NCBI GenBank assembly: GCA_002269645.1
Contig: NIVC01003148.1
Coordinates: forward strand, 1 to 64,000
Direction of reading: 5' to 3'
Origin: Macrostomum lignano
Lineage: Eukaryota
DNA length: 64,000 bases
In this document: piece by piece, positions 8,691 through 44,314 of the stretch
How positions within the stretch are numbered: position 1 is the stretch's first letter
Layout: each line of letters begins with the position of its first letter
Position numbers and translations under genes: made by a program
Notes under the pieces: generated by a model
Told to the model about the DNA's origin: nothing
Databases searched by the model: none
The model's input: only the letters and a program-made list of their open reading frames with translations

Positions 8691-9347
8691 TATTATTTAA
8701 TCTACTAGCCCATACTGTAGCTCTCTCTCTCCCTCTGCCAACCCTGCCTAAAACTTCCATGCTCGCAACTTTTTTTTATAATGTACTTCACTGTATTTTG
8801 GTGCCACTACCTAGACCTATATTATTGATAAATTTATTATTGAAGTTTTTTTATTTATTACCCAGCCATTGTCTGTGACTTCGGACCCCTGATTATGGTT
8901 AGCCCTCTCTCCCCGCGCCCTCTCATTGGCTGTCTCTATCATCTGTTATTCTTTGTTTCCTACCCCCATTTGCGTTCTGTGTGGCTGCAGCCAATCCCCT
9001 CTCGCTCTCTCTGCCCCACCTGCTGTTTTTATTACCCTGCAGCTTTAACCCCACCACATTTGGAGCTGTCTTTTATTTACTGCCGTGTGCTGTTCCCCCC
9101 TTTGCGATTCGCCTCTGCGAATCCAAGCCCAATACAAGAACAAATTAAGTAGATATGTTACTTGAGTAGTCTGATGTAACCGCCCTTGTCGCCTGTCCGC
9201 TCCTATTTGTGGCAGCCAGCCGCTTTAGTTTCTTATTCATGCATAAATTATTGTCTATGGACAAACTCAAATATACTTGTAAAGGGTGTGTGGCTGCGCC
9301 CAGTCTCGCCAAGCGCGAATACTCCTAATACATTCAAACTCACAACA

Positions 9348-9364
9348 TGGTGTCAGAGGTGGGA
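9348..9364 (+). promoter_or_regulatory. Primer-binding site, complementary to a tRNA-Leu-type 3' end
   Basis: TGGTGTCAGAGGTGGGA directly after the 5' LTR; closely matches the TGGTGTCAGAAGTGGGA Leu PBS consensus. Confidence 0.75.
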
Positions 9365-9385
9365 GACTCCAATTAGATAATTGCT

Positions 9386-12300
9386 TTGTGCGTCGTTTTT
9401 GGTGGCAACTACAGCGGCATGTCCGACGCAGCTGGACTGCGACCTCCAGGGCCCATGGTATTCGATGAGGCCAAGTCAGAACGCTGGAGAAAATGGATCG
9501 GCGCATTCAATTTATACATGACCGCCACAAAGCGCGACAAGGAGGCTGACAGCATGAAGAATGCGATTCTGCTGACCGCCATCGGTGAAGAAGGCAGGGA
9601 CATATTCGAGACATTCGAACTCTCTACTGACTCTGCTCACAAAGACATCATCGACAAATTCGAGAAATTCTGCATTCCTCTGGACAGCGAAACATTTGAT
9701 CGCTACAAGTTTAGAATGCGTAAGCAGGAGCAGTATGAAGATTTTGATCACTTCATAAATGAGCTACGATTGTTAATAAAGCGATGCAGTTTTTCAAAGC
9801 CTAAAAATGGGCAATGCATTGACGATGCCATGCTTCGAGATCAGATAGTATATGGGGTTCATAATTCAGCACTCCGTGAACGGCTCCTTGAGAAAGAGAA
9901 GCTGACACTGGAAAAGGCTATTGTTTTGTGCCGTGCCACCGAAGCTTCAAAGATGCAAGCCAGGCAGATGACAGGTATAAAGAGTGAAAACAGAAACTCT
10001 GTCAGTCGAATTGTAAAAGACCCTGATCACAAGTTGCAGCAATCAACCAGAGCCAAGTCCAAGTCTATCACACGAAAGGCTCCTACAGGACAACAGGAAT
10101 GCAGATACTGCGGCAAGAACCACAAATTTGGTCACACCAACTGCAGTGCCTATGGCAAGACCTGCTTGAACTGTGGACAAAAGAACCATTTTAAGGCCAT
10201 GTGCCGGAAAGAGAAAACAAAACAATCAAAACAGATTCGTACAGTTGAAGATGAGCTTACTGACGTGACTGAAACATCGAATTCTCACCAAGCTGCTGCA
10301 TGGGATACTACAGATAAAGAAGTGCTGACGGAATCAAAGATCTTTAAGGAATACAGCGATGTGTTCGAAGGAATTGGATGTCTGCCTGGAGCGCATCACA
10401 TTTCATTGAGAGAAGGTGCAATACCGAAAGTCCAAGGCCCAAGGAAAGTCCCATTTGCGGCTATGAAGGCCCTGCGTGAAGAGCTTGACCGTTTGCAGAG
10501 CCAAGGAATAATAACGAAATGCGACCAGCCGGCAGATTGGGTGTCCAATGTTGTTATCGTCTGGAAGAAGGATAACTCGATTAGACTGTGCTTAGATCCA
10601 AAGAATCTAAATGATGATATTGTCAGAAATCGATACCCCATTCCAACTTATGACGAGATGATTAGCGAGATGACAGGAGCAAAATACTTCTCAACATTTG
10701 ATGCTAAGTCTGGCTTCCATCAAGTTCAGTTGGATCAAGAAAGTTCACTTCTTACTGCATTTCACACTCCGTTTGGTGTTTACAAATGGAATCGACTAGC
10801 TTTTGGTCTAAAGGATGCACCTGAAGCTTCCCAAAGGCGCATCAAAGAAGAAGTGACAAGTCAAGTAGAAAAATCTGCTAACTACATCGATGACATCATA
10901 GTATGGGGAAAGACTCGGGAAGAGCACGACCAAGCAGTTCGAAATCTTTTGGAGCAATGCAGGAAAAAGAACCTGACTCTGAACAGGCAAAAGACGAGCA
11001 TTGGCAAAACCGAGCTTCGATTTCTTGGACACATACTAACTGACAAAGGTGTGAAAGTAGATCCACAAAAAGTAAACAGCATCAAAGAAATGCCGCACCC
11101 AAACAGTTTTGAACAGCGTGCTGAAAAGCAAGCGCAGCTCCAACGGTTTATTGGTAGTGTAAATTACTTGTCAAGATTGCTTGCGCCATTTGACCCGAAT
11201 AAAGACCTAATTTTATCTGTCGACGCCAGCAAAGATGGCTTGGGATCAGCACTATTGCAGGAAGGACATGTCATTGAGTATGCATCATCAGCTCTAACAT
11301 CCGCTCAAAAGAAATATGCCCAGATAGAGAAGGAAATGCTTGCGATAGTATTTGGCTGTCGAAGGTTCAGACAGTATCTCTGGGGACGTAGAGTCTCTGT
11401 CGAGTCTGACCACAAACCGCTGCAGTATATTATGAAGAAGCCAATGGATGAACTATCGGCTAGAATTCAACGTCTGATACTCAAGATCCAAGAATTCGAC
11501 TTAGACGTGCAATACAAACCGGGAAGATATCTTTATTTGGCTGATACATTAAGCCGTGCTTTCTTGCAATCCGTGCATTCGGCGAATGACATAGACTCTG
11601 AGCTTGAGAATCAAATCTTGGGTATCCAAAAGGTTTGTCTACCGGAAGACCTACTTAAGAAGATCCAGGAACACACATATGCAGATTCAACTTGCCATGC
11701 GATCAAGAATCGCATTCGCGAGGGTTGGCCGGAACTCAGAAACCAATTGCCAGAACAACTAAAGCCTTTCTGGAATGTTCGTCACGATTTAGCCGAGCAC
11801 GACAGATTAATTATGAAAACCAGCAAGATATTTATACCACTGACCATGCGCCACGAATTCTTGAACATCATTCATGAAGGGCATCAAGGCATTGAAAAAA
11901 CACTGCTAAAAGCAAGAGGATCGGTATACTGGCCTCAGATGCGTCGGGACATCCAGAACTACATAGCAGCATGCGATGCCTGCCAAAGCAGCCAATCCCG
12001 ACCACAGAAAGAAACAATCATTAAAAGTCCGCATCCTGATTATCCATTTCAAGAGTGCGCGACTGACCTGTTCGATTTTAAAGGTCGAAAATTCATAGTT
12101 GTAGTGGACAGATACAGCCGATGGATCTGTGCAGATCCATTAAGATCAAATACAGCTGAGTTTGTTATCCTGCAATTAAAGAAATATTTCTCCACATTCG
12201 GAACACCTGAGAAGTTGCGATGCGACAACGGACCGCCATTCTCGTCCAACGCATTCCAATTATATGCTAAATCAAGCGGGATAGCGCTTGTAACATCATC

Positions 12301-13006
12301 ACCAAGATATCCACAGTCCAATGGATTAGCGTAGCGAGCTGTGCAAACAGTGAAATGCTTCTTGAGAAAGAATGAAGACTTTGAAAAAGCAATGCTTCAC
12401 TACCGTAATACTCCGATTGAGCGTGGGTTACCGACTCCAGCAGAGCTACTGATGGGAAGGAAATTGAGGTACGAACTACCTGTACCAATAATGGAATTGA
12501 TACCAAAACGAACATGGACGAAGAATGATTTGGAAACACTGAACGCCATGCGAAGGAAGGACGCGATTCGCTACAACAGTACAGCTAGGGATTTGAAGCC
12601 ACTGGAGACTGGAGAGCAAGTCTGGTTGTACGAGGACAAGAGACAGTGGATTCCAGCAGAAATTCAATCGCGGGATCATACGGATCCAGAACGATCGTAC
12701 CAAGTGCAAACTGCTGATGGTAAATGCTACAGAAGGAATCGACGATTTTTAGCACCCAGAGTTGCGAACTCCAGACTGTCTGCAATACCGAAACATCTAG
12801 CGCTACAGCGACCAGTAGATATCTCAGAGAGTCATCTGAAAGATTCAACTGCATCATCCGGAATTCAGCCAACTCATGAGCATCCAACAACAAGCAATCC
12901 TGCTGAAGATGCTAACCGACAAATGACCAATGCTGACACAAATGCGCCATATGTGACACGATCGGGTCGTACTGTCAAACAGACGAGATTCTATCAAGCT
13001 GTTTAA
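9386..13006 (+). pseudogene. Gypsy gag-pol (Gag, double zinc knuckle, RT, RNase H, integrase); protease absent; in-frame TAG at 12332-12334
   Basis: CRYCGKNH...CLNCGQKNHFKAMC; RT FSTFDAKSGFHQ and YIDD; RNase H VDASKDGLG; integrase HEGHQG...CDAC, ATDLF, CDNGPPF, SNGLA*RAV. No DTG/DSG protease motif. Confidence 0.9.
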
Positions 13007-16000: not shown

Positions 16001-17036
16001 GTAATAATCCTGCTCAAAACGGCCATTCCATCTGGCAGCGTTGAGGCACGACTTTCAGTTTAGGGCTCACCATATGCCGGGGTCCTGGCAGCTGCTGAGC
16101 GACCCGCTGCTGCGCTGCCTGACGCATCCCCACCACATGCTGCTGTATAATTCTGCTGCGCTACTTCGGCTGGGCCAAGGCACAGCCAGAAGATCTGCGC
16201 AGGGCCTGCCTCAATGAGTCAACCGGCGGCCGGTTACTTGATCCGGCATCGCTCGCATTAAGTCCCGCGGTCTCTGGCGCGGTTCTCGAGCGGAGCGAGT
16301 TGCGACGGCAGAAGCAGATCCTAGCTGCGCTATTATTAGGTGCGAGCTTTAGGGCTGGCGCTGTGACCCTGATAGTTCCGGCTTGTTTTTATTTCTCTGC
16401 AGTTTGTTGTGTTTATTTGGACTGCTGGTTTCCTTCCTCCCGCTTTCAGTTGGTGTTGGGGTTCGCCTCCCCTAGCTGAACCGGGTGTGCCGTTCTTGTA
16501 GGCCCCTTGTCTTGTTTTTGCTCTGTTTCTATTTTGGGGTTTAATCATTGATCAAAAACTTTAGCGTTATCTTAAAATATTTTGCCCCCCGGGGTGTAAA
16601 ACTCTCAATTCTCAACTCGAAGCAAGATCTGAGAAATAGCTGACGGTCTGTATAGTACGCTATAATTACGGTTGGTAGCAGCACTACTTGTATAATGCTT
16701 AGTTGTATGTAGCAAAAATCGACGTACATCTGTAATGGTGTCTGAAGAACTGAACGAGCCCGTGCTAGCGACCGCTCGACTACGATTTTACCACCCTCCC
16801 CCGGAATTGAATACCCCGGCAGACGGAGTAATTCGGAGGCAACGAATTTGACTGCGCGAGATTTTCCGGCGAGAAATGCGCGAACTGACGCAGGCGGCAG
16901 TTCAAATTTTCAAATTTCAATTTTTTTCGTTTTCAGTGTGTTGACCAGCTGACTCAGCTCAGCTACCACGTATCTGTTTCCCCATAGATATTCGTATTGA
17001 TATTCAATTTCTAACAAATGCAACAAAATAAACCTA

Positions 17037-18281
17037 CTTGTACAGCTCGGATTTGCATGAAAATTTACAGAAAAATTATTACACACAAAAAAAAAACCTC
17101 TGTGAAACTTCAAGTCCATCAGACCACGCAAAGCGGAATGGCAAGAGTTTTAAAGGTGCTCGTATTTATAATGCATTGTATATGCGCACAGTGTATAACA
17201 TGTATGCCCATTTGCAACACTTGTACAGCTCGGATTTGCATGAAAATTTACAGAAAAATTATTACACACAAAACAAACACCTCTGTGAAACTTCAAGTCC
17301 ATCAGACCACGCAAAGCGGAATGGCAAGAGTTTTAAAGGTGCTCGTATTTATAATGCATTGTATATGCGCACAGTGTATAACATGTATGCCCATTTGCAA
17401 CACTTGTACAGCTCGGATTTGCATGAAAATTTACAGAAAAATTATTACACACAAAACAAACACCTCTGTGAAACTTCAAGTCCATCAGACCACGCAAAGC
17501 GGAATGGCAAGGGTTTTAAAGGTGCTCGTATTTATAATGCATTGTATATGCGCACAGTGTATAACATGTATGCCCATTTGCAACACTTGTACAGCTCGGA
17601 TTTGCTTGAAAATTTACAGAAAAATTATTACACACAAAACAAACACCTCTGTGAAACTTCAAGTCCATCAGACCACGCAAAGCGGAATGGCAAGAGTTTT
17701 AAAGGTGCTCGTATTTATAATGCATTGTATATGCGCACAGTGTATAACATGTATGCCCATTTGCAACACTTGTACAGCTCGGATTTGCATGAAAATTTAC
17801 AGAAAAATTATTACACACAAAACAAACACCTCTGTGAAACTTCAAGTCCATCAGACCACGCAAAGCGGAATGGCAAGAGTTTTAAAGGTGCTCGTATTTA
17901 TAATGCATTGTATATGCGCACAGTGTATAACATGTATGCCCATTTGCAACACTTGTACAGCTCGGATTTGCATGAAAATTTACAGAAAAATTATTACACA
18001 CAAAACAAACACCTCTGTGAAACTTCAAGTCCATCAGACCACGCAAAGCGGAATGGCAAGGGTTTTAAAGGTGCTCGTATTTATAATGCATTGTATATGC
18101 GCACAGTGTATAACATGTATGCCCATTTGCAACACTTGTACAGCTCGGATTTGCATGAAAATTTACAGAAAAATTATTACACACAAAACAAACATCTTTG
18201 TGAAACTTCAAGTCCATCAGACCACGCAAAGCGGAATGGCAAGGGTTTTAAAGGTGCTCGTATTTATAATGCATTGTATAT
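17037..18281 (+). repeat. 183-bp tandem array, left arm (~6.8 units)
   Basis: tgtacagctcggatttg recurs every 183 bp (17039, 17222, ...); near-identical units; ends abruptly mid-unit. Confidence 0.95.
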
Positions 18282-18519
18282 GAATTCCAATCCCAGCCGG
18301 AACTACTTTTGCTTGTGTTCCAGAATATGAAGTTATACTCAAACACAGAACTTGTTAATAATTATAGGATAGAGTTAAAAATAAAAGTGGAGTATAAGTT
18401 CGTATAAAATTAGAATTTGAGGCAAGCATTAATCACATGTTGGCTTGTGGTGTTGCCCAAGAATGTCAGGCAATGTCTGTCTTAAAACAAGTATTGGCAA
18501 ACTCCGGCCTCTGTCCCTG

Positions 18520-19300
18520 CGCCTCCCTACGTCCCTAGATTCCTTTGAAACTTCAGTCAATTCTCTACTGTTTCCTCTCTTCTCTATCGTCTCTCATCCT
18601 TTCCCTCCCATCTCATCTCATCTCTTTTTTCCTCTCTCCTTTATTTCTTCCCTCTCCCCGATCTTTTCTTGTCTCTCCTTATCTTTCTTTGGTTTTTCTA
18701 CTCTCTTCTCTCTCATTGCTTTATCATCTCTCCTTTCTCTTCTTATTTTCTGCTCTCTTATCTCTTCTTATTTATCTCTGCTCTCTACTCTCTATTCTCT
18801 CTCCCCTCTGTATAAATTCTCACTCCTCACTCTCCCCTCTTTCTTGACACTTCCCACTTCTCTCCTCTCTCCGATCTCTTCTCTCTACTCTCCCCCGATC
18901 TGCTCTCGTCTCTCATCTCTTCTATCATCTCTTTACTCTCTCCTCTCTCGTCTCAATCCTCTGTAATATATCTTTCCTGCCTCATACTCTCTCTCATTAT
19001 CTGATCTGTAGTCTCCTTTTATCATCTCTCCTCTCTCAACTTCCTCCACTACTCTCACCTCTCCTCTCCATCTCTCTCTCCCTCGCTCTTATCTCTCCAC
19101 TCATCTCTCTGTTCTCTGCTCTCCCATCTCTCATCTCCTTACTATATTCTCTCCCCTCTCCGTTCTTCTCTTTCCTCTCCTCTCCCCTGTCTCTCCCTTT
19201 CCCCTCTCTCCCTTTTGCTCTCGATTCTCTCCCATCTTTTCTCCTCTTTCCTCACTCCACTTCTCTCTCTCCCTTTGTCTCTCCTCTCTGCTTTCGTGTC
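18520..19300 (+). repeat. ~780-bp polypyrimidine (CT-rich) tract upstream of the transposase exon
   Basis: Almost purine-free low-complexity sequence ending at the acceptor tgtaatag|at (19308/19309). Confidence 0.85.
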
Positions 19301-19308
19301 TGTAATAG

Positions 19309-21928
19309 ATTCTCACTTTCTAAAACTCCTCCGCCATAGAATTCTGCACTGTGTAAACTCACCTTTTTCTGTTGACCTAAATATTCTTTTTATTTCCGAC
19401 TTTTCATGGGCGCAAATTCATTCATGCTTAGACTTCCACCACACGGACGTGACAACGTACATCCAAATTCATTACAATTACTTTATTACGGACACCCCTA
19501 GCGAGATTCAATATGGCGTTTTTCTGTGTAGCAATCATATTATAAAGTCAATTTCGGACCACTGCAAAAAACACTCCTTGAACCAGCGAAGCCGTCAGCT
19601 ATTTTTGAAGTTATTTTCTTTAATTCAGTATTCCAGTACGCAAAAACTATCCGTCAACTTCATCATGGACACGCTTATTATATTTGGATCTCCGTATGCC
19701 GAGCAAACCGTTGCTGCTAGAACTAGGGTAGCAAATTTTCTGAGAGATGGCCATGTTCCAGAGTATTCCGAATCAATCAACAAAGACTCATTTATACTTC
19801 AAGACAAGGATCATGCAAGTATGAACGCGGAAGGTGACGCGATACTGAAAAATTCTCCATACTACGAATACTTTAAAAAGGAATTTACCACAATTCAAAA
19901 TACTCTCGCGCATAAAACCGGTCATTCGCATCTGACAGATAATGAATTCTACAACCCTCGATTGATAAACTTTTTCTTGCTTAGATACCTGTCCATCCTC
20001 CCTCTATGGGCTATATTTACATGGAATCATTTGATTGCTAAAAATTCAAAGTCTTTTTACTCAAATGCTCATGTGGAGAGTTGGTTTTCTTCTGTGAAAA
20101 GTCGATTTAACACCAAGTCCAGGCTGAGTACCTTCGTAGAGAATTATGTACCCTTTGTACTTCGTAGAGTTTCAGAGTGCACCATCTCGAGCAAAGTACC
20201 TGCTCCAAGTTTTTGCAGAAAAAGGAAGTCATCAATCTCAGAAGAAGCTGCAACTGAAGGTTGGCAAAAAAGGTCGAGAAATAGCAAGCGTTCAAGATAC
20301 TCAGATACTAGTAGCAATCAGTATTTTGCTAATGTCGCCGATCCTGACGAAACGGAAAAGAGTAGCAGTCAGTCCCAACAGAGCAACCCAAAATCAAAAC
20401 TTCCGGGATGCACAGCTGGTAGGAACAGACCCAATAAAAATTCCAGTCAAAATGGAACCGCAGATAACAGTAGAAGCAGGTGGCAAAGCAAGAGGAGCAC
20501 GCGGCAGAAAGGAAGAACGGTGCAAAGCGATAATAGCCAGATTCTCTTCACCCTTCCTGGCTCTGGAACGGATATTCCCGTAACGCAAGAGCATCGTCAA
20601 AGTTTGTTGGGAAGCAACCTGTTAGACTACACGGTAAGTATTTTCATAAATACTTACTTACTTACAATAAATACTTAAGTAAGTATACGTAAATACTTAC
20701 AATAGAAAATTCAGTTGACTTATGACCTATTTTCACCATTATCTTTTCCTGTCCCTCTTGCATTACTCGCGATAGATTTTATTGGCCTATTGCACTGCTA
20801 TCACATCGAACAACGCCCAAAGGATTGTAATAAGTGAGGGCGACTTTTACTACATATTGAATCTATCAGGAGATGAGTTCAACGATGGAGTCCAGAACTT
20901 GCTGAGAAGAACTCTCGGATGGAAGGCAAGTTCTGTTAATGAAACAATAATGTCGTTTTTGATGCAAAATAAATTTGTACACTTGTAGTGAATTCTCAAT
21001 GAAAATCTTACGCATGCACCAATTTGAGGTATAAAATTATTTGCTCTCTTGATGTTGCAGGGCCTGAATCAAATAATCGTGCCTATTTTAAACAGCGGGC
21101 ATTTTTACTTGATCGTTATTTGCGGCGTTGAACGAAAGGTCTTTGTGCTGGATTCGATTCGGCGTAATGCGCAAGAGAAGCAAGAGTTTCATGTTCTAAT
21201 TCGCAAATGGAAGTGAGTACAATAGTTTGTGTACATGTCCAGAGAATAAATAAAAGTGAACTTAAGTACTGATGTGGCAAATCTGTAAAATTTCTGTTAA
21301 CTTTCTAGCCGCATATTGGCTTCCGATGGAAAATGGCATTTGTTGACCAAAGCGCTCCGGTATTCACCAGCAGCACATCGAAGCCATATGAGCTGGCCAC
21401 AATGTCGAGAACAATGCAATCTGATGGTCATAGTTGCGGAGTGTTTGTATGCCTGTACGCTAGGGCATTAGCTCTTGGTTCTGGTCTCCGGTTCAAGAAC
21501 AATCCGACGGCTCTCGGAAGATACAGACAGTATATCTGGAATGTGATCCAGGCCTACAGCTATGGAGGAACGCAGGAAGAGTGCTCAGCCTGTAGCAACA
21601 CAGAACCTGACGCTTCGGGCGTTAGTCGTCGCATAAATTGGGTAAAATACGAGTAATTTTCCTTTTTTTATTTTTTTAACTACGAATTTCACTTTTGCCA
21701 AGCAGATTGCTTAAAGCAGTCATACAGATTGAACTCCAGCTTAAGATGCAGTCGATCGAATATGCAGTCGAGTTGTGCTTACAGCATAATGCGGTTAATT
21801 TTCGCTCACCCCTTCATTTCTAGATTGAATGTCCCTCCTGTCTTCGTTGGTATCACACAGAATGCGTCGAAGGGTCGACCGATCCAGGTTTTTGTTGCGC
21901 AACGTGCAAAGACATGTTTTCGCATTAG
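19309..21928 (+). CDS. MULE-type transposase C-terminal part fused to Ulp1/SENP (C48) protease and a PHD finger; 5' truncated; exons 19309-20633, 20776-20925, 21061-21212, 21309-21641, 21824-21928
   Basis: Transposase motifs FISDFSWAQIH (2nd D), FLCSNHIIK (CxxH), LPLW, SNAHVESWFSSVK (E). Splicing gives LLDYT|ILLAY, IIVPILNSGHFYLIVI...VLDS (His, Asp), QSDGHSCGVFVC (Cys), and CSAC...NW|IECPSCLRWYHTEC...FCCATC (PHD). One 1-nt frameshift is needed near 21330-21333. Confidence 0.75.
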
Positions 21929-22239
21929 TTACTTGATTTTTACACAACTGTACATGTACGTGAATGTCGCCATTACTCGTAAATGGATCTCTCCAGTTCC
22001 TTATTTTTGGAGCAAGAGGTTCTCTAGATCTGGTTCTGAGTGCACCTGTGGCAGTCGCGACGGCCAATCTTCCATGTACAGAAGGGTCGTGAGGCTGCTG
22101 CTTTTTGCTGCTAATTTTCTGACTAGAAAAATATGTATGGCCGCCCTCCCATCCCGTTGTTTTTGTTTGTTCGCCCGCTTTTTTCATCCCCCTATGCAGA
22201 TGTTCGATTACGAGCCATGGAATGCAATATAATCAATTT

Positions 22240-22600
22240 ATGCTAAGGACCACTCGAATTGGGGATCGACCGACATGGACATGAACAGGCGAACAACCAT
22301 TCCCACTCGAACAAAACAGGGGGCTCTAACCGCGGCCCATGCAGGTGTTCGATATTCTTTCAGAGAGTGGAGCAGCGCTCATTTAAATAGTTCAGTTTGC
22401 AACTTTCATGGGACTTCTCAGGGTTTTCAATCGGGCCTCTTCTACACTAAAAGTAGGACCTCTCGCCACAGTGGATCTTTGTGGCTCCGATTTAATCGAG
22501 AGCTTGACAACAGCGTGATGACTACTAAGAGTAATATTATTAGGGAACACATGCTCGATCTAATGGTTGGTATAGAGCGATTATGAGCCGAACTGTTCAG
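22240..22600. mobile_element. LTR-like fragment inside the MULE element
   Basis: Shares ggatctttgtggct...cagcgtg..gactactaagagta...agggaac with 1670-1745 and 13615-13680; starts tgctaagg like 1132. Confidence 0.35.
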
Positions 22601-23324
22601 TACATTTTGTATGTAAATCTATTTAAGTATTCATCTTTGTTGTAATTTAAATTCCTGTTATAACCTTTTTATTGGTTACATGCATTTCATCAAAACTGTC
22701 CACGCTTTTATTGATGTTATTAGAAGTACCACGCGTGCATATACATATATGCACATGTACGTAACATGTAATACTAAATACATCAAAAGTTCTCAGCGAC
22801 TGTCACTTTGAAAATTTCGAAACAAGTTTGTATTTTTAACCCAAGCTGCATATCCCAACGGTTGCATAGAGTGGTGTAGAAATTAGGCCAAATGTTGCGT
22901 TATTTTTGTGCTAGGCTTGCGTGCCAAGCCAAGAGGAGTCTACAATTGGCACCTGCGCTTCACAGGGCTGGCTTATACATGTACATGCAATATTTGGCTC
23001 GCGTTAGTAATTCAGACTTATGACTTATTACGCAGCTACGATCAGAGACTGAATTGGTATAGGGTTAACAACAGAAATGTTTGTGGACAATAGCTATTTG
23101 CATTAATAGCAATGAAAATTACATTCTGCTAATTGAATTTTACATTTGCAACGTGAGTGGAATACTCACCAAAACAGTGCCGACATAATTCGCAGTCACG
23201 CATGCATGAGCTGGGTACATGTAACATGTATAATATACGGGCCTATATGCAGGTATTGCACTTCGCGTTGCATCGCGCTTACGAGCTAGCAAGCTATATG
23301 TGCATCATATAAATATACGATATA

Positions 23325-24917
23325 CGAGCACCTTAAAAAAACTCTTGCCATTCCGCTTTGCGTGGTCTGATGGACTTGAAGTTTCACAGAGGTGTTTGTT
23401 TTGTGTGCAATAATTTTTCTGTAAATTTTCAAGCAAATCCGAGCTGTACAAGTGTTGCAAATGGGCATACATGTTATACACTGTGCGCATATACAATGCA
23501 TTATAAATACGAGCACCTTTAAAACTCTTGCCATTCCGCTTTGCGTGGTCTGATGGACTTGAAGTTTCACAGAGGTGTTTGTTTTGTGTGTAATAATTTT
23601 TCTGTAAATTTTCAAGCAAATCCGAGCTGTACAAGTGTTGCAAATGGGCATACATGTTATACACTGTGCGCATATACAATGCATTATAAATACGAGCACC
23701 TTTAAAACTCTTGCCATTCCGCTTTGCGTGGTCTGATGGACTTGAAGTTTCACAGAGGTGTTTGTTTTGTGTGTAATAATTTTTCTGTAAATTTTCATGC
23801 AAATCCGAGCTGTACAAGTGTTGCAAATGGGCATACATGTTATACACTGTGCGCATATACAATGCATTATAAATACGAGCACCTTTAAAACTCTTGCCAT
23901 TCCGCTTTGCGTGGTCTGATGGACTTGAAGTTTCACAAAGATGTTTGTTTTGTGTGTAATAATTTTTCTGTAAATTTTCAAGCAAATCCGAGCTGTACAA
24001 GTGTTGCAAATGGGCATACATGTTATACACTGTGCGCATATACAATGCATTATAAATACGAGCACCTTTAAAACTCTTGCCATTCCGCTTTGCGTGGTCT
24101 GATGGACTTGAAGTTTCACAGAGGTGTTTGTTTTGTGTGTAATAATTTTTCTGTAAATTTTCATGCAAATCCGAGCTGTACAAGTGTTGCAAATGGGCAT
24201 ACATGTTATACACTGTGCGCATATACAATGCATTATAAATACGAGCACCTTTAAAACTCTTGCCATTCCGCTTTGCGTGGTCTGATGGACTTGAAGTTTC
24301 ACAAAGATGTTTGTTTTGTGTGTAATAATTTTTCTGTAAATTTTCATGCAAATCCGAGCTGTACAAGTGTTGCAAATGGGCATACATGTTATACACTGTG
24401 CGCATATACAATGCATTATAAATACGAGCACCTTTAAAACTCTTGCCATTCCGCTTTGCGTGGTCTGATGGACTTGAAGTTTCACAAAGATGTTTGTTTT
24501 GTGTGTAATAATTTTTCTGTAAATTTTCATGCAAATCCGAGCTGTACAAGTGTTGCAAATGGGCATACATGTTATACACTGTGCGCATATACAATGCATT
24601 ATAAATACGAGCACCTTTAAAACTCTTGCCATTCCGCTTTGCGTGGTCTGATGGACTTGAAGTTTCACAGAGGTGTTTGTTTTGTGTGTAATAATTTTTC
24701 TGTAAATTTTCATGCAAATCCGAGCTGTACAAGTGTTGCAAATGAGCATACATGTTATACACTGTGCGCATATACAATGCATTATAAATACGAGCACCTT
24801 TAAAACCCTTGCCATTCCGCTTTGCGTGGTCTGATGGACTTGAAGTTTCACAGAGGTGTTTGTTTTGTGTGTAATAATTTTTCTGTAAATTTTCAAGCAA
24901 ATCCGAGCTGTACAAGT
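23325..24917 (-). repeat. 183-bp tandem array, right arm (~8.7 units), inverted relative to the left arm
   Basis: Reverse complement of the same 183-bp unit; degenerate at the inner end (~23290-23340). Confidence 0.95.
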
Positions 24918-27593
24918 AGGTTTATTTTGTTGCATTTGTTAGAAATTGAATATCAATACGAATATCTATGGGGAAACAGATACGTCTAGCTACTAGCTAA
25001 GTAGTGGCGCCATTATACGCTCGTACAAACATAAATATGGCGAATAGGTTTTAGCAAATTAATAGGCCTAAGAACATACACCCCCCCTAGTATTGAATTT
25101 AAATGTCTTAAGTCTATTCTATTTTTTGTTGAATCTATATGTTTTTATTTTTTTAACATTTCATCTTACTGAAACAGTTTTAAATGTGATATTATCTAGA
25201 CTAGATATGCTTCTTTTAACCTATCACTATCAGCACAGCTAGAGTTATATCAAGGACTATATTTGTATGGTAGTCTAGTAGAGTATTAAAACTTGCTTAA
25301 TAGGCCCTACATAAACCTACTTATATAGTAGGCCTAACTAAGCCTAAGACTTAGCCATCTGTACCTATAGCAAAATAAGACTAGTTAGGCTAGTCACTAG
25401 GCCTAGGTCATGACCTATAACTATGGTTGTACTTGCATTTTCCACTGCACTAGCACTATACCAAATTTTATATTTTGTTTAGGCTTAGTGCAGTTGGACT
25501 ATAAACTCGAATAGCAGATATCTACAGCATGAAAAAAACTAGGCCTTAGTTAAAATTTTATTCAAACTAAATATACATATATATATATAGGCTTAGTAAT
25601 AAATAGTATCCAGACTCTAGTTCTAGTATATCTATTTTATATATAATATTAAAGTGAAAATTAACCTTCCTTTAGCTTTAAATAGCTTACAATATATATA
25701 TTACTTTGTTTAGGTTGCTAAGTAAAAATTAGCTCTTATGACACTAGTTGCATTTTTAGACACTTGTTATCTTATAAACTTTGTTATCCAAATAAATTGA
25801 ATCTATAATTATTTTTAACAGTGGATAATGAATTGACCAAACTTTAAAGCATGTCAATTGGCTAGTTGACAGCATGTTATATTTTCAAAGTAGATAACTA
25901 AAGTGTAAATTGACAAAGTGTTTAGTAACCACTAGTTGTCTAAGCTATATATCCAAATTTATCAACAATTGTTTTGCTTGTTAGTGTTTTATAAATTATT
26001 TCAAACATAACATGATTTAAACTAAATGAGAAACTAACTTTAATCTATTTTATATACAAAATTTGGCCTATTGCAAAAATAATATTTATATTAGGTCCTT
26101 ATTTATTTTGGTCTTTCTTTTCCCTATTTTCCTTTTATCTTTTGTTTCCTTTATTCTATTTTTATTAAATGACTTAGAATTATCATTTGTTAACTGTTGT
26201 GTATTTTAGTATTAAAAAATGAATTTGGCCTAGCCTTAGTACTTGTATCAACTCTTGTATATTTCTAGTATTATCTTTTTTGTCCTTTCTACTAGTTAGT
26301 GGCTATCTGTCCTTAGATTTCAAATAAATCTTAAAGATCAATTCAAATATAAAATGTTCATTCTATATTGTTTCTTTTCAATACTATGGTGCAAGCCCAA
26401 AATGCTGAAGCTGCCTTACTACTCAAGTATAATATAAAATCTCGTGGGATAGACTCACCTAGTCGCTCAATAAACCTACCTGCTCAAGCCCTTAAGACTG
26501 AAGTCTGTCTGGCCTATGAGCTGAAGTCAGCATATTCATTGTCCAAATTAGAAGAGATTTGTGGTTATCTACAAGCATGTTTTGTCACAACTATAATACT
26601 AATCTCTTATTACTTTGTTTTTTATATTACATCAACAAAGTGCTATAACTGTGATTAATTGCTGTTAATTTCTATTTTTTCTTTCATAGTTTAACTTTTT
26701 TAGGCTGTACATGCCCTTTAGCTATGTAAAATACCCTCCTATTTTTGTACCATACACCTCACCTGTGCTTTGTAACTTTCATTCGATGCCACAGTTGTAT
26801 TTGACAGTGTAACTTTGTATTCTTTTTTAGGCAAGGTTAAAGAAATTACATTTTTCCTATTGTAACACTTTTAGATTGAGGTGCGCTTGATGCCGACGCA
26901 CAAGTGAACAACATCGCGCTAGTATGTGCAACCTGATGTCATCATGGAATTCGCCTTTTGCCCGTTTCATCAGATGGAGCGCGCAGTTTTCATTTAGCGT
27001 CATCAGAGGCCGATTTTCCCTGACAGTCTTTATCGGCATTTATTAACGTCTGTCTGTCTCTGTCTGTCTGTCTCTCTCTATCTATGGACTGTCAGGGGAA
27101 ATGGTGTTTGGCTTGTCGAAGTAACGGCGTGACCTATTTCGCTTGGTTTTGTTCGTACTCCTTGACTGCTGCTCGTTCATCACCAGCTCCTAACTCATTG
27201 CCGCGGACCGCATGTAGGCCACGCGAGTTTGACTGTCTATTCTGCCAAAAAGTTTAGCTTCACGCGATGAGTTCGGTAATTCGATGGAAGAGTGACATTC
27301 ATTGATGACAGCCCCGTTTGTTGTTATTAACAGCAATACGCAATTCGATGGCGGCAAAATATGGACGCTACGTGCATGGTAAGCAGTTTATTTTCATCAA
27401 TTTAAGAATTCATTTGCATCTGTGGCATCGGTGATTGTTGTAGTAGTTGTTTTTTTTCTACATCAGTTTCTATTATTTGCATTCCTTTGCACAAATATAT
27501 GAGATTTATATAACTATACAAGCTTTATAAGTAGTCGTTGTGCTTATCAAAACAAAGAAGTTGTGAAATTGTTTGTGTTTTTAATTCTGTGAC

Positions 27594-30524: not shown

Positions 30525-30835
30525 AAATAGAAAGCATCCCCAAGACAGCAAGCATTCCCCCAGATAGCCAGATAGCAAGCCTCCACGCAGATAGCAAGCC
30601 TCCACGCAGATAGCAATCATCCTCCAAGATAGCAAGCATCCCCCAGATAGCAGCATCCTGCAGATAGCAAGCATCCACCCAGATAGCAAGCATCCTCAAA
30701 GATAGTAAGCATCCCCCCCCCCAGATAGCAAGCATTCTGCAGATAGCAAGCATCCTCAAAGATAGTAAGCATCCCCCCCCCAGATAGCAAGCATTCTGCA
30801 GATAGCAAGCATTCTGCAGATAGCAAGCATTCTTG
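30525..30835. repeat. Degenerate ~11-12-bp minisatellite (gatagcaagcat-based)
   Basis: gatagcaagc recurs more than 12 times with variable C-runs. Confidence 0.8.
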
Positions 30836-30842
30836 GTGCAGT

Positions 30843-31218
30843 AGTGCAGTAATCCTTGGTTTATCAAGTGCAGTAATCCTTGGTTTATCAAGTGCAGTAA
30901 TCCTTGGTTTATCAAGTGCAGTAATCCTTGGTTTATCAAGTGCAATAATCCTTGGTTTATCAAGTGCAGTAACCCTTGGTTTATCAAGTGCAGTAATCCT
31001 TGGTTTATCAAGTGCAGTAATCCTTGGTTTATCAAGTGCAGTAATCCTTGGTTTATCAAGTGCAGTAATCCTTGGTTTATCAAGTGCAGTAATCCTTGGT
31101 TTATCAAGTGCAATAATCCTTGGTTTATCAAGTGCAGTAACCCTTGGTTTATCAAGTGCAGTAATCCTTGGTTTATCAAGTGCAGTAACCCTTGGTTTAT
31201 CAAGTACAGTAATCCTTG
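30843..31218. repeat. 24-bp tandem array (gtgcagtaatccttggtttatcaa), ~15 copies
   Basis: Head-to-tail near-perfect units with no spacers. Confidence 0.95.
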
Positions 31219-32949: not shown

Positions 32950-33325
32950 CGTAGGAGGGAAGAGAAGAGAGGGAATGAAAAAGAGAGAAGGGAGATAAGA
33001 GAAGGGAAAAGCAATAAAATAAAGGAGAAGAGAGGAGTGGAGAGAAGAAGAGAAGAGGAGAGGATGAGAGAAATGAGGGAGAAAAGAGGAGAGGGAAGAC
33101 AGAAGACAAGACGAGAGGAGAGGAGAGGAGAGAGATGAAAGAAAAGAGGAGAGAGGAGATGAAAGAGATGATAGAGAAGAGAAGAGAGGAGATGAGAGGA
33201 GAGAGGAGATGAGAGAGATAATAGAGAAGAGAAGAGAGGAGATGAGAGGAGAGAGGAGATGAGAGAGATAATAGAGAAGAAAAGAGAGGAGAGAAGACAA
33301 GAGAGGAGAGGAGAGAGGAAGAGAG
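32950..33325 (+). repeat. Polypurine (GA-rich) tract with internal short duplications
   Basis: gagaggagatgagaggagagaggagatgagagagataatagagaag is repeated. Confidence 0.85.
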
Positions 33326-39141: not shown

Positions 39142-40608
39142 ATGGCGTCATCCGCCTCTTTAACCCCCGCTGAAGCCGGGGCCCCGGCAACTCCGGCCGG
39201 TGACTCTGGCACCAGCGCCGCCCCACCGGGGGCAGATGGGCTTGCCGCCGGCTCGGCTGGTGACATGCCCGCACGCGCAACCGGGCCCTCCGCTGAAGCC
39301 CGACGCACCCGCAACCAACGCCGCAACGAGCGGCGACGGCGACTACGGGGTACTGCGGGCCGGCCACCGGCGGAAGGGGAACCTAGGGAGGGCGAGGCTG
39401 CTGTTGGGCCGAAAGGAACCACAGCAACCCCTGCCCCCCAGGATACAACCCCCGCTGGTGAGCCACCCAGTATACCTGCTACAAGCGCGGCCGGGCCTTC
39501 GGGAACCGCCGCCACCAACTACGCCTCAAAGGTCAAGCTCCAACCGGCGGTCATCGTCTTCGGGGAAGAGCAGGACCTCACGGCCGACGAGCTCGACAGT
39601 GCCTGGCGCACCATCGATGCTGCGCTCATCGACCAGCTCCTGGCGGGCCGCCCTGTGAGCGTGGTCAAGTCTGCCAAGACCGACGGCTGCATCTTCATCT
39701 GGTGCAGCTCGGAGGAGAGCAGCCGCAATCTACGCGAGCTTCTGCCAAAGCTGAACTGGCCCAAGAAGCTCGGCAAGCTCGTCTTCGCCAGCGAGGGCGA
39801 ACGACAGAAGACCCAGCGCTTTCGCGTCTGGATCCCGGCCGGCAGTGCCATTAAGTCCGGAGATCAGCTTAGGCAAATATTGCTAAAGCTGCACCCCGAC
39901 CTTAAGGTCAACGGGCTCCTACACCACGCCACTTCCCGCAAGGAGAAGGGGGCTACGGTGATCCTAGGGCTCTCTGATGACTGGGCTAAGCGCTTGCCGC
40001 CTAAGTCCACAATTCATATTGGTCTGACTCAGCTGACCATCCTCCGTTGCGAGGAGCGGAAAGCTGATGAAGCCAAGAATGCCAAAGCTTCCGAAACCGG
40101 AACTGGGGCCCAGGCTCCTCCGGCAAAGAAGCCGAGGCAAACGGCCGATCCTATGCCCGGTAAGGCAGTTCGCGCTGCTGAAACCGGAAATCGCAATCGC
40201 AGACCCGCCAGGAGCACCCGGAGGTCCGGCCTGATCCAGCGCGCGCTGGACCAGGCCAAGAACCTTCGTGCGCATCGTGAGCGGGCCCGCGCTTCTCGCG
40301 CTCCACCCCAACAGCCAGAAGGCCAGACTCTAAGCGGGGAGGCTCCGACCGACTGGTTCGAGTCTGTGACTCACCAGGAGGCTGGCGCCACCCGCATCGA
40401 CCTGACCGACGAGGCAGAGGGGACGGGCAGTGACAGCACCGAAGCACGCAGGAGAGGCGACGGTAACGTCCACGCTGGGCTCACGTCCGCGGAGGACTCC
40501 ACAGCCACCCTAACTGCTGAGGACGCTGAAACTCCCATGGAGGTCTGCGGGTCACCCACCACTGAAAAGGAGGAGGATGACCTGCTCAACGATTCCCCAA
40601 CTGCGTGA
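39142..40608 (+). CDS. LINE ORF1 (488 aa, no CCHC knuckles, LOA-type)
   Basis: Long ORF with ATG directly upstream of ORF2; central YASKVK...WIPAG domain flanked by low-complexity regions. Confidence 0.85.
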   Translation: MASSASLTPAEAGAPATPAGDSGTSAAPPGADGLAAGSAGDMPARATGPSAEARRTRNQRRNERRRRLRGTAGRPPAEGEPREGEAAVGPKGTTATPAPQDTTPAGEPPSIPATSAAGPSGTAATNYASKVKLQPAVIVFGEEQDLTADELDSAWRTIDAALIDQLLAGRPVSVVKSAKTDGCIFIWCSSEESSRNLRELLPKLNWPKKLGKLVFASEGERQKTQRFRVWIPAGSAIKSGDQLRQILLKLHPDLKVNGLLHHATSRKEKGATVILGLSDDWAKRLPPKSTIHIGLTQLTILRCEERKADEAKNAKASETGTGAQAPPAKKPRQTADPMPGKAVRAAETGNRNRRPARSTRRSGLIQRALDQAKNLRAHRERARASRAPPQQPEGQTLSGEAPTDWFESVTHQEAGATRIDLTDEAEGTGSDSTEARRRGDGNVHAGLTSAEDSTATLTAEDAETPMEVCGSPTTEKEEDDLLNDSPTA

Positions 40609-40610
40609 TA

Positions 40611-43600: not shown

Positions 43601-44314
43601 TACGAGAGGAAAGACTATTGTCATCCACTCCGACAGCCAAGCGGCCTTACAGGCCCTTTGCCACACCACAACGAACTCCCGGACAGTCGCCGACTGCGCC
43701 CGGCAGCTCAACCTCCTGGCCAGAAGCAATACTGTCAGGCTGAAGTGGATCCCAGGGCACGCAGGGTTTCCGGGGAACGAGCTGGCAGACACCCTCGCCA
43801 AGAGGGGCGGCTCTGGCTCTTTTTTCGGCCCTGCCCCCTGGTCCCTATGCCCTTGACAGTCATCAATCGTCAGATCGACGACTGGGCTGACTCCCTCCAC
43901 AGGGACAGATGGGCGGGCACCCAAAACTGCCGGCAATCTCGTGCCGCGGTTCCTTGCCCGTCTCACAGGCTCAGAAACATCCTTCTGAACCAGAATCGGA
44001 AGGATATTCGAGCCCTTGTCATGACCCTTACCGGCCATGGCTACCTCGCCAGGCACTGCTTCCTCCGAGGCGACCTCGAGAGCGAAATTTGCCCCTTTTG
44101 CGAGTGCGACAATGAAGATGCTCAGCACTTTGTCTGTCACTGCCCTTTCTTTAACAGAGACCGGCTACGCTACCTCGGGCCGAACCCGTCCATTGACGAG
44201 GTTTGCCAGCCCGACAGCATCCCACGGCTCATCCAGTTCCTTCGGGCGACTAGACGAGCCAGTTTCTTCCCAACGGAAGATCACGCTGCAGGACGGACCG
44301 GCGGACCACCCTGA
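40611..44314 (+). CDS. LINE ORF2: AP endonuclease, RT, RNase H, C-terminal CCHC; one 1-nt frameshift at ~43834-43838
   Basis: LQINLQH...LVQEPW, GDINAHH, SDH (APE); KAPGPDGI, FRPISL, PQGGVLSPVLW, YADD (RT); YTDGS, SDSQAAL, WIPGHAG..GNE.AD (RNase H). LTGHG...CPFC...HFVCHC lies in the shifted frame. Confidence 0.92.

What the first reader, a model, noticed from the sequence alone, without database searches (positions are those of the whole stretch)
16968..24985. Foldback/NOF-like Mutator element with 183-bp satellite arms around a transposase gene
Seen: two kilobase-scale arrays of the same 183-bp unit in inverted orientation. Each is capped by the same ~69-bp unique terminus, with a 6/9 match in the flanking 9-mers (MULE-sized TSD), and they enclose a MULE-type DDE gene. 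Established: Drosophila FB-NOF and Phantom-type Mutators have long repeat-built inverted arms. Inference: this is an analogous system with a much longer repeat unit. The arms differ in copy number (~7 vs ~9) yet share unit variants (cacctctgtg vs catctttgtg; gagtttt vs gggtttt), which suggests inter-arm conversion. It could form a multi-kb hairpin, generate dsRNA and seed a satellite family.
Basis: partly seen in the sequence, partly recalled or inferred. Interest (0 to 1): 0.8.

Follow-up and report, generated by a model that had tools for sequence, protein, structure and literature searches.

The report
Defective Rehavkus-type foldback transposon
This is a broken copy of a known kind of jumping gene (a Rehavkus-type foldback DNA transposon) whose two ends are built from inverted arrays of a 183-bp repeat; it is a clean example, but ordinary for this family.

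Summary
Two inverted arrays of one 183-bp unit (6.8 and 8.7 copies, 98-99% alike) are each capped by an identical 68-bp terminus at 16968 and 24985. They are flanked by 9-mers that match 6/9.

The interpretation needs correcting. The enclosed gene is not NOF/Phantom-like. Its closest described relatives are Rehavkus transposases, a group lumped with Mutator-like elements. A profile of 39 homologues hits all six published Rehavkus DDE domains (E 8e-75 to 5e-27). The window protein alone hits Rehavkus-1_TC at 2e-10.

Rehavkus elements are already described as foldback transposons with TIRs plus variable numbers of subterminal tandem repeats. Rehavkus-1_TC, for example, is 9.5 kb with a 164-bp unit in runs of mostly 5 and 8 monomers. 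They also have 9-bp TSDs and a PHD finger. The 183-bp unit is therefore not unusually long.

The gene here encodes transposase, a Ulp1-like protease and a PHD finger. It lacks its first ~520 codons, including the first catalytic Asp, so this copy cannot move on its own.

Closely related transposase genes elsewhere also sit next to 174-209-bp arrays. A sponge relative has a perfect 9-bp TSD.

Verdict: new member of a known kind, modest interest.

The parts
16959..16967 (.). Left flanking 9-mer TCAGCTACC (candidate decayed target-site duplication)
   Evidence: It matches the right 9-mer at 6/9, and all three mismatches are C/T transitions. P is about 0.011 for 6/9 and about 6e-4 jointly with purine/pyrimidine identity.
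16968..17035 (+). Left terminal cap (unique 68-bp terminal inverted repeat, starts ACGTATCTG)
   Evidence: It is identical 68/68 to the reverse complement of 24918-24985, and these are the only two copies in the window.
17036..18282 (+). Left subterminal array, 6.8 copies of the 183-bp unit
   Evidence: The ORFs 17018-18283 and 17038-18330 exist only because the unit is 61 stop-free codons in two frames.
18540..19300 (+). CT-rich low-complexity filler that sits where the 5' half of the transposase gene should be
   Evidence: Sequence read and TRF rows. No homologue matches upstream of about 19311-19386.
19386..20633 (+). Transposase remnant. It runs from just before the second catalytic Asp (19398-19400), through CxxH (19527-19538), to the catalytic Glu (20076-20078) and a basic linker. 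It ends at a GT donor.
   Evidence: phmmer gives 148 homologues, best E 1.3e-25. Alignments are. tblastn maps the start to P0001 residue 520. It hits Rehavkus-1_TC at 2e-10.
20776..20925 (+). Ulp1-like protease exon 1 (AG acceptor, GC donor AAG|GCAAGT)
   Evidence: Splice sites and reading frame were read. The joined exons score Peptidase_C48 at 1.2e-7, 32.2 bits against a cut-off of 20.7.
21061..21212 (+). Ulp1-like protease exon 2, carrying the catalytic His (21100-21102) and Asp (21151-21153)
   Evidence: Pfam C48 at 3e-4 for this exon alone. The junction to the next exon is 1 nt out of frame unless a weaker donor at 21192|21193 is used.
21309..21641 (+). Ulp1-like protease exon 3 with Gln (21417-21419) and the catalytic Cys (21435-21437). 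The first half of the PHD finger starts at about 21579.
   Evidence: tblastn to the Ulp1 domains of P0001 and P0004.
21824..21928 (+). Last exon: the second half of the PHD finger (IECPSCLRWYHTECV...CCATC) and the TAG stop at 21926-21928
   Evidence: PHD PF00628 at 1.8e-4, 21.9 bits, just under the cut-off of 24. Homologues carry a PHD finger at the same C-terminal place.
21929..23321 (.). 3' internal non-coding stretch
   Evidence: There is no family or homologue match here; only short ORFs are present.
23322..24917 (-). Right subterminal array, 8.7 copies of the 183-bp unit
24918..24985 (-). Right terminal cap (68-bp terminal inverted repeat)
24986..24994 (.). Right flanking 9-mer CTAGCTACT

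Best explanation
The interval 16968-24985 is one 8,018-bp copy of a Rehavkus-type foldback DNA transposon. Rehavkus is a DDE cut-and-paste group placed with or next to Mutator-like elements.

Structure (shown). Each end is a 68-bp terminal inverted repeat followed by a subterminal array of a 183-bp unit, 7 copies on the left and 9 on the right. The single multi-exon gene encodes a transposase fused to a Ulp1-like cysteine protease and a PHD finger.

Mechanism (inferred from the family and from experiments on the foldback MULE Muta1). The transposase recognises the terminal cap, where cleavage occurs. It uses the subterminal repeats as multiple weak binding and synapsis sites. More repeats would mean stronger binding and more excision. 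Integration makes a 9-bp target duplication.

State of this copy (shown). It is defective. The first ~520 codons, covering the zinc-finger-like N-terminus and the first catalytic Asp, are gone and replaced by about 760 bp of CT-rich filler. One exon junction is out of frame. It could move only with transposase supplied in trans.

History of the arms (inferred). The arrays change by unequal exchange and by gene conversion within and between arms. That would explain unequal copy numbers with shared but reshuffled variants. It would also explain arms that are only 1.4% different while the flanking 9-mers differ at 3 of 9 positions.
For: - Structure.
- Homologues: 148 distant homologues. They are 900-1500 aa proteins with a D(~75)D(~230)E core and a C-terminal Ulp1 or OTU domain plus PHD.
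- Rehavkus membership: a profile of 39 homologues, built without the window sequence, hits all six published Rehavkus DDE domains at E 8e-75 to 5e-27 (Z = 1e6). It hits none of 30 shuffled controls. The window protein alone scores 2e-10, 1.3e-7 and 1.8e-7 against three of them.
- Literature: Rehavkus has a 9-bp TSD, TIRs of 26-412 bp, a PHD finger and a minisatellite (PMC6446971). [quoted passage not shown] Rehavkus-1_TC is 9.5 kb with a 164-bp unit in runs of mostly 5 and 8 monomers, and the repeats evolve in concert (PMC12581902, PMC10218199).
- Relatives' loci: a 186-bp array of at least 15 copies lies 0.6 kb 3' of P0001. A 174-bp array of 32 copies lies 3.2 kb 5' of P0006. A 209-bp array of 10 copies lies 3' of P0002. 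A 117-bp array lies 3' of P0088.
- Sponge relative L015: about 365-bp TIRs starting ACGAGTG, and a perfect 9-bp TSD cccaacttc.
- Fold: the model's best solved transposase match is the IS256-family ISCth4, ahead of Hermes; the Ulp1 fold is confirmed.
- Truncation. Frame problem.
- Role of subterminal repeats: Muta1 experiments (PMC5499845).
Against: - The TSD is only 6/9.
- No second copy, empty site or autonomous copy could be examined, because the host genome is not available. The unit was not found in the JGI metagenome contigs.
Contigs break inside the arrays.
- The two Brachionus loci show no arrays.
- Repeat units of different loci share no sequence, so no conserved binding motif is shown.
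- The PHD hit is just below Pfam's cut-off.
- Binding of the 183-bp unit by the transposase is inferred only. In Muta1 the repeat is 12 bp.
Confidence: 0.85

Rival explanations
1. One reading: a Foldback/NOF- or Phantom-type Mutator element, meaning a member of the Phantom clade of MULEs whose arms happen to use a longer repeat unit.
For: - Long repeat-built inverted arms and a 9-bp TSD-like flank are shared with FB and with Tm1 (PMC3169594).
- Two homologues give sub-threshold Pfam MULE hits in the correct register: P0020 at 1.2e-4 and P0028 at 0.014.
Against: - The best-described relatives are Rehavkus, at E down to 8e-75 for the family profile.
- No homologue reaches the Pfam MULE cut-off, and none shows a FLYWCH domain.
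- The family profile does not detect canonical MULE DDE domains (at most 5.6 bits).
- The D2-to-E spacing of about 230 residues matches the six Rehavkus DDE sequences. The plant MULE DDE domains are much shorter overall.
- Phantom and NOF sequences themselves were not compared directly.
Confidence: 0.07
2. It is not a transposon insertion at all. Instead it is a local rearrangement or a mis-assembly: an inversion or inverted duplication inside a pre-existing 183-bp satellite array that happens to trap a dead gene.
For: - Only one copy is visible.
- The flanks differ strongly in G+C: 54% on the left at 14-16 kb against 33% on the right at 24-26 kb.
- The TSD is imperfect.
Against: - Identical 68-bp unique caps sit exactly at the two outer array ends in inverted orientation, each abutting unique DNA.
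- The arms differ in copy number and in variant order, so they are not a collapsed duplicate.
- The window contains no N.
- The enclosed gene belongs to the very family known to carry such termini, and its relatives also sit next to arrays.
- The 9-mer match falls at the family's own TSD length.
Confidence: 0.04
3. It is the same element, but a young insertion. On this reading the 99% arm identity simply reflects recent transposition, the 6/9 flank match is chance or a badly repaired TSD, and no inter-arm conversion is needed.
For: - The caps are 68/68 identical and the arms differ by only 1.4%.
- The surviving reading frames are open for more than 400 codons.
- The chance of a 6/9 match is about 1%, which is small but not negligible.
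Against: - All three 9-mer mismatches are transitions, and 9 is the only length from 2 to 12 at which at least two-thirds of positions match.
- Variants are shared between arms in recombinant combinations (A21T with or without A110G, with or without C61T/C64T). That requires exchange at some time, although possibly in an ancestor copy.
Confidence: 0.25

Closest known systems
Rehavkus DNA transposons (Repbase group; e.g. Rehavkus-1_TC and Rehavkus-3_TC of Tribolium castaneum, Rehavkus-1_HR of Helobdella)
   Same: - The transposase DDE core is homologous.
[quoted passage not shown] Rehavkus-1_TC has a 164-bp unit in runs of 5 and 8 monomers; this element has a 183-bp unit in runs of 7 and 9.
- Size is 5-18 kb in the group and 8.0 kb here.
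- The TSD length is 9 bp.
- There is a PHD finger.
- The repeats evolve in concert.
(PMC6446971, PMC10218199, PMC12581902.)
   Different: - Identity to Rehavkus-1_TC over the part present is low (46 bits).
- The nearest protein anywhere is only 31% identical, so this is a deep, undescribed lineage.
- A Ulp1-like protease domain sits between the transposase and the PHD finger. The Rehavkus descriptions I could read do not mention one.
- The listed Rehavkus hosts are arthropods and annelids. Homologues found here also come from a sponge, a rotifer and a stick insect.
- This copy is 5'-truncated.
Tetris (Drosophila virilis foldback element) and its TIR-220 satellite
   Same: It is a non-autonomous foldback element. 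Its TIRs contain roughly 220-bp tandem repeats capped by a terminal domain, and those repeats have seeded kb-scale satellite arrays (PMC4079207).
   Different: Tetris encodes no transposase and its superfamily is not assigned. Whether the 183-bp unit here forms free arrays is unknown.
Muta1 (Aedes aegypti, Phantom-clade MULE; 'type 2 foldback')
   Same: The TIR is a terminal motif plus subterminal tandem repeats, and TSDs are 8-9 bp. Experiments show that repeats strengthen transposase binding, are needed for cleavage and raise excision frequency. Natural non-autonomous copies have unequal repeat numbers at the two ends, 3 and 7 (PMC5499845).
   Different: The repeat unit is 12 bp and the TIR 145 bp. 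The transposase is a different MULE clade of 504 aa with no Ulp1 or PHD domain.
Drosophila FB-NOF and Tm1 of root-knot nematodes (Mutator/Foldback)
   Same: Composite inverted termini of variable length and 9-bp TSDs (Tm1: PMC3169594).
   Different: The transposases are of Phantom type. By my own recollection the FB arm repeats are short, tens of bp. No homology to these was tested here.
Galileo (P superfamily, Drosophila)
   Same: Long, internally repetitive TIRs and structural dynamism (PMC3573991 and PMC3688188, listed).
   Different: A P-element-type THAP transposase from a different superfamily.
Ulp1-bearing Mutator elements (plant KI-MULEs/CUMULE; MuDR elements of hydra and lancelet) and Ginger1
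   Same: A Ulp1 (C48) domain, with or without a PHD finger or an OTU domain, is attached to a transposase (PMC2836005). In this family too, Ulp1 and OTU occur as alternatives in the homologues scanned.
   Different: Ginger1 has an integrase-type core. The plant elements have canonical MURA-type cores, which the family profile does not detect.

Membership tests
Rehavkus (Repbase group, MULE superfamily in the broad sense) | Transposase DDE domain homologous to Rehavkus transposases | tested here: met
   The family profile hits six of six Rehavkus DDE domains at E 8e-75 to 5e-27, and no shuffled control. The window protein alone scores 2e-10 against Rehavkus-1_TC across the stretch from D2 to E.
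Rehavkus (Repbase group, MULE superfamily in the broad sense) | [quoted passage not shown] | tested here: met
   68-bp caps plus 6.8 and 8.7 copies of a 183-bp unit. The definition comes from PMC12581902 and PMC6446971.
Rehavkus (Repbase group, MULE superfamily in the broad sense) | 9-bp target-site duplication | tested here: inconclusive
   The flanking 9-mers match 6/9 and the three mismatches are all transitions (P about 0.011, or about 6e-4 with R/Y identity). A relative in Oopsacas (L015) has a perfect 9-bp TSD.
Rehavkus (Repbase group, MULE superfamily in the broad sense) | PHD finger in the transposase protein | tested here: inconclusive
   A C4HC3-type finger is encoded at 21579-21641 plus 21824-21925. 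Pfam PHD gives 1.8e-4 and 21.9 bits, below the cut-off of 24. Homologues have PHD at up to 29.8 bits in the same position.
Rehavkus (Repbase group, MULE superfamily in the broad sense) | Complete DDE triad (needed for an autonomous copy, not for membership) | tested here: not met
   D2 (19398-19400) and E (20076-20078) are present. D1 and everything N-terminal to it are absent.
Mutator-like elements in the strict sense (Pfam MULE PF10551 / MURA-type core) | Significant match to the MULE transposase domain | tested here: not met
   The window ORF has no Pfam hit at E<=1, and the D1-D2 region that the Pfam model covers is missing. Among the 40 sequences of alignment A1, only three give sub-threshold hits. 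Two were located and lie in the correct register: P0020 at 22.9 bits and P0028 at 16.2 bits, against a cut-off of 27.6. The family profile scores five plant MULE DDE domains at 5.6 bits or less.
Mutator-like elements in the strict sense (Pfam MULE PF10551 / MURA-type core) | Fold related to IS256/MULE-type RNase H-like transposases | tested here: inconclusive
   For the AlphaFold model of homologue P0004 (core pLDDT above 90), the best solved transposase match is ISCth4 (IS256 family, 6xg8_A) at E 9.1e-4 over 349 columns. Hermes (hAT) follows at 6.9e-3. This supports a relationship but does not discriminate.
Phantom / FB-NOF | N-terminal FLYWCH-type DNA-binding domain (present in many Phantom transposases) | tested here: not met
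   The N-terminus is missing in the window. No FLYWCH hit appeared in any homologue scanned; zf-C2HC or unassigned Cys/His motifs were found instead.
Phantom / FB-NOF | Transposase groups with NOF/Phantom/Muta in a phylogeny | not tested
   No NOF or Phantom sequence was at hand. The strong Rehavkus match makes this grouping unlikely.
Foldback elements (structural class) | Long inverted termini composed of tandem repeats and able to fold back | tested here: met
   Arms of 1315 nt at 99% complementarity, separated by 5.4 kb.

The most novel reading that the evidence does not exclude
This may be a deep, undescribed Rehavkus-related lineage (transposase, then Ulp1 or OTU, then PHD) that is spread across Metazoa from sponges to insects. 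As a rule it may carry nucleosome-sized (about 170-210 bp) satellite arrays as its arms. If so, it would be a general, phylum-spanning generator and carrier of satellite DNA, kept homogeneous by inter-arm conversion. A protease-PHD module could link transposition to SUMO/ubiquitin and chromatin state.
Probability: 0.3. Interest if true: 0.5.

Novelty: new member of a known kind. Interest (0 to 1): 0.3.

Why it matters
- It is a complete, well-assembled example of a poorly documented transposon group. Rehavkus is known mostly from Repbase entries and from Tribolium satellite studies. Here both satellite-built arms are captured, which short-read assemblies rarely manage.
- It shows that the Rehavkus-type core is linked to Ulp1 or OTU protease and PHD modules.
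- Relatives exist well outside the arthropod and annelid hosts listed so far.
- Together with the relatives' loci, it supports the view that such elements are a recurrent source and vehicle of satellites with units of roughly 170-210 bp.
- For genome annotation, the arrays here should be labelled as transposon termini, not as free satellite. The long ORFs that run through them are not genes.

Tried and rejected
- A word-index protein search with the transposase remnant found nothing.
- A profile search in the same index was swamped and returned only one protein.
- The exhaustive phmmer search was what found the family.
- A PDB sequence search with the family profile gave only marginal PHD hits.
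- The 183-bp unit has no exact match in JGI metagenome contigs.
- The related-loci scan failed with the broad alignment. With a narrower one it returned only three short contigs.
- I looked for a conserved motif between the cap and the unit, and among the repeat units of different loci. No score exceeded the shuffled controls, apart from a marginal low-complexity match between the L005 and L007 units.
- Rfam has no match in the element at E<=0.1, so the unit is not a recognisable RNA-gene derivative.
- I looked for remnants of the 5' transposase exons anywhere in the window and found none.
- I looked for a second copy of the cap, the unit or the internal region in the window. The only hit was a low-complexity resemblance of the CT-rich filler to 33021-33324.
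- I considered Ginger1, because of its Ulp1/OTU/PHD module, and rejected it: there is no integrase (rve) core.
- I considered hAT, because of the long D2-to-E spacing and the CxxH motif. I rejected it because no hAT domains were found and ISCth4 outranks Hermes in the fold search.


Full report
**1. What is in the sequence**

Tandem Repeats Finder reports a 183-bp array at 17036-18282 (6.8 copies, 99% matches) and the same unit, reverse-complemented, at 23322-24917 (8.7 copies, 98%). The inverted-repeat search gives arms 16968-18282 and 23671-24985, 1315 nt at 99% complementarity, 5.4 kb apart.

Outside each array lies a unique 68-bp cap, ACGTATCTGTTTCCCC...AAACCT. The two caps are identical 68/68 and occur nowhere else in the window. 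The unit also occurs only in these two arrays, 16 hits in all. A self-BLAST of the whole element finds nothing else in the 64 kb except a low-complexity resemblance at 33021-33324. The window contains no N.

**2. The units**

I put the monomers in register from each cap inward. A handful of variant sites are then shared between the arms:
- A21T is in L4 and in R1, R6, R8, R9.
- C61T/C64T is in L7 and in R3, R4, R6.
- A110G is in L3, L6, L7 and R1.

The order of the variants differs between the arms, and all combinations of A21T with A110G and with C61T/C64T exist. The arms are therefore not mirror images. Exchange (unequal crossing-over or conversion) has shuffled variants within and between arms, either in this copy or in its ancestors.

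In register the arms differ at 18 of 1315 positions (1.4%). The unit is 61 codons long and free of stops in two frames. That is why 421-549-aa ORFs run through the arrays; these ORFs are artefacts.

**3. The flanks**

The 9-mers next to the caps are TCAGCTACC and CTAGCTACT, matching 6/9. Among lengths 2-12, only 9 gives at least two-thirds matching positions. P(>=6/9) is 0.011 for random 9-mer pairs of the window and 0.014 for pairs drawn from the local flanks. All three mismatches are C/T transitions, so the purine/pyrimidine pattern is identical; the joint probability is about 6e-4.

I read this as a probable decayed 9-bp target-site duplication. If it is real, the 9-mers (3/9 different) have diverged far more than the arms (1.4%) or the caps (0/68). 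That fits homogenisation of the arms after insertion. A chance match is not excluded.

**4. The gene**

Between the arms, on the + strand, lies one gene with canonical splice sites:
- a long exon ending at 20633|GT;
- then exons 20776-20925, 21061-21212, 21309-21641 and 21824-21928, the last ending in a TAG stop.

The last four exons encode a Ulp1-like protease with His, Asp, Gln and Cys in place. Pfam Peptidase_C48 gives 1.2e-7 at 32.2 bits against a cut-off of 20.7. They also encode a C4HC3 PHD-type finger, with Pfam PHD at 1.8e-4 and 21.9 bits, just under the cut-off of 24. The junction 21212|21309 is one nucleotide out of frame unless a weaker donor at 21192|21193 is used.

The long exon has no Pfam hit and no hit in the word-index search. 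An exhaustive phmmer search of 1.84 billion representatives found 148 homologues, the best at E 1.3e-25 and 31% identity.

These homologues are 900-1500-aa proteins with the following layout:
- a Cys/His-rich N-terminus;
- a core with invariant D...D...E (DATGSI; VTDFSWALIH...LCxNH; SNAHVENWF), spaced about 75 and about 230 residues apart;
- a C-terminal Ulp1 or OTU domain, with a PHD finger in many of them.

The window protein aligns without interruption from just before the second Asp (19398-19400) through the Glu (20076-20078). Nothing upstream of about 19311-19386 matches any homologue. The first ~520 codons, including the first catalytic Asp, are missing. About 760 bp of CT-rich low-complexity sequence (18540-19300) sits in their place. 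This copy cannot make an active transposase.

**5. Which family**

Dupeyron et al. (PMC6446971) describe Rehavkus, a Repbase group that Yuan and Wessler lumped with MULEs. Its listed features are a 9-bp TSD, TIRs of 26-412 bp, a PHD finger, a minisatellite near the terminus, and sizes of 4.9-18.5 kb. Their supplementary alignment contains six Rehavkus DDE domains.

I built an HMM from the 39 homologues, leaving the window sequence out. It hits all six Rehavkus domains at E 8e-75 to 5e-27 (Z set to 1e6) and none of 30 shuffled controls. The window protein alone hits Rehavkus-1_TC at 2e-10 (46 bits, aligned from D2 to E), Rehavkus-3_TC at 1.3e-7 and Rehavkus-1_HR at 1.8e-7.

The same HMM gives at most 5.6 bits against five canonical plant MULE DDE domains.

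The link to MULEs proper is therefore remote:
- Three of the 40 sequences in alignment A1 give sub-threshold Pfam MULE hits. The two that I located lie in the correct register.
- An AlphaFold model of homologue P0004 (mean pLDDT 77, core above 90) has as its best solved transposase match the IS256-family ISCth4 (E 9.1e-4, 349 columns), ahead of Hermes. Its C-terminal domain matches yeast Ulp1.
- No FLYWCH domain, which is typical of Phantom, was seen in any homologue.

**6. The architecture is already known for this family**

[quoted passage not shown] Their specific findings (PMC12581902, PMC10218199):
- Rehavkus-1_TC is 9.5 kb, with a 164-bp unit in runs of mostly five and eight monomers per terminus.
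- Rehavkus-3_TC carries 6-8 or up to 50 repeats.
- Some termini exceed 11 kb.
- The repeats evolve in concert.
- Some repeats have expanded into satellite arrays of up to 80 kb.

Tetris (220-bp units) and Galileo are further precedents. The present element, at 8.0 kb with a 183-bp unit in runs of 7 and 9 monomers, fits this description almost point for point.

**7. Relatives' loci**

I fetched DNA around several homologues.
- P0001 (JGI metagenomes; L001 and L003): a 186-bp array of at least 15 copies starts 0.6 kb after the stop codon.
- P0006 (L008): a 174-bp array of 32 copies lies 3.2 kb upstream and runs to the contig end.
- P0002 (L011): a 209-bp array of 10 copies lies downstream and runs to the contig end. 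A 582-bp repeat of 2.9 copies lies upstream.
- P0088 (Bacillus rossius; L014): a 117-bp array of 5.9 copies lies 450 bp downstream.
- Two Brachionus loci show no arrays.
- P0005 (the sponge Oopsacas minuta; L015): a 7,455-bp element with TIRs of about 365 bp that start ACGAGTG. It is flanked by a perfect 9-bp duplication, cccaacttc. For comparison, the window element's TIR starts ACGTATC.

The array units of different loci share no sequence beyond chance; only the scale of the period recurs. No relative's locus held here shows both array-built arms, because the contigs end inside the arrays.

**8. How it most likely works**

Shown:
- the structure of the element;
- family membership;
- loss of the 5' half of the gene.

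Inferred from the family and from Muta1 experiments (PMC5499845):
- The transposase binds the terminal motif, where cleavage occurs.
- Subterminal repeats add binding and synapsis sites and raise excision frequency.
- Integration duplicates 9 bp.
- Non-autonomous copies with unequal repeat numbers at the two ends are still mobilised in trans.

Whether a 183-bp unit is bound in the way a 12-bp unit is remains untested. The role of the Ulp1 and PHD modules is unknown. The Ginger paper suggests a link to DNA repair or chromatin through the SUMO/ubiquitin pathways (PMC2836005).

**9. Verdict**

It is wrong about the specific family, about the novelty of the unit length, and about the gene being intact. 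The element is a new, deeply divergent member of a known kind.

The host is unknown. The surroundings are repeat-rich animal-like DNA, with a Gypsy pol, a LINE and fibrinogen-like ORFs.

Noticed in passing
window 47913-48587 and 50861-51469: There are two more tandem arrays, 82 bp x 8.3 and 42 bp x 14.5. A 32-nt stretch just outside the 82-bp array (47868-47899) matches the 42-bp units in inverted orientation (TTGTCATGTACTTAAAAAGTATGCAATG / CATTGCATACTTGGAAAGTACTTGAGAA). This may be a second, unrelated foldback-like element of about 3.7 kb with different units in its two arms.
   Followed up: partly
window 51590-51949 (-) and 52136-52510 (-): These ORFs carry fibrinogen C-terminal-domain-like motifs (FSTYDRDHD...GGFWF..C...NPNG). 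They are probably exons of a fibrinogen-related host gene next to the 42-bp array.
   Followed up: no
window 9386-13006 (+) and 39142-43856 (+): A Gypsy-type pol ORF of 982 aa (RT, RNase H, integrase) and a LINE with an endonuclease-RT-RNase H ORF of 1083 aa. The window is transposon-rich eukaryotic DNA.
   Followed up: partly
window 33021-33324: A GA-rich low-complexity block that is about 70% similar, on the opposite strand, to the CT-rich filler (18573-19295) that replaces the 5' half of the transposase gene. This sequence type may be common in this genome.
   Followed up: no
L015 7084-14538 (Oopsacas minuta, JAKMXF010000327.1): A complete-looking relative: 7,455 bp, TIRs of about 365 bp starting ACGAGTG, a perfect 9-bp TSD cccaacttc, and transposase similarity at 9136-11488. 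An HTH_48-type gene on the other strand lies inside it and may be a nested mariner-like insertion.
   Followed up: partly
proteins P0001 and P0003 (alignment A2, columns ~515-525): The two closest long homologues have Asn instead of Asp at the first catalytic position (LNATGSIF). P0001 occurs at what looks like one locus in three metagenome samples with 99% identical flanks. It may be an inactive or domesticated copy.
   Followed up: no
L001 7739-8402: L001 and L002 carry a 664-bp insertion relative to L003. L002 also departs from L001 and L003 about 450 bp after the gene, just before the 186-bp array. There is structural polymorphism around that relative.
   Followed up: partly
window 30568-31218: Adjacent minisatellites (19/59/73-bp periods, then 24 bp x 15.7 at 96% identity) lie inside a 226-aa ORF on the minus strand that has no Pfam hit.
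   Followed up: no
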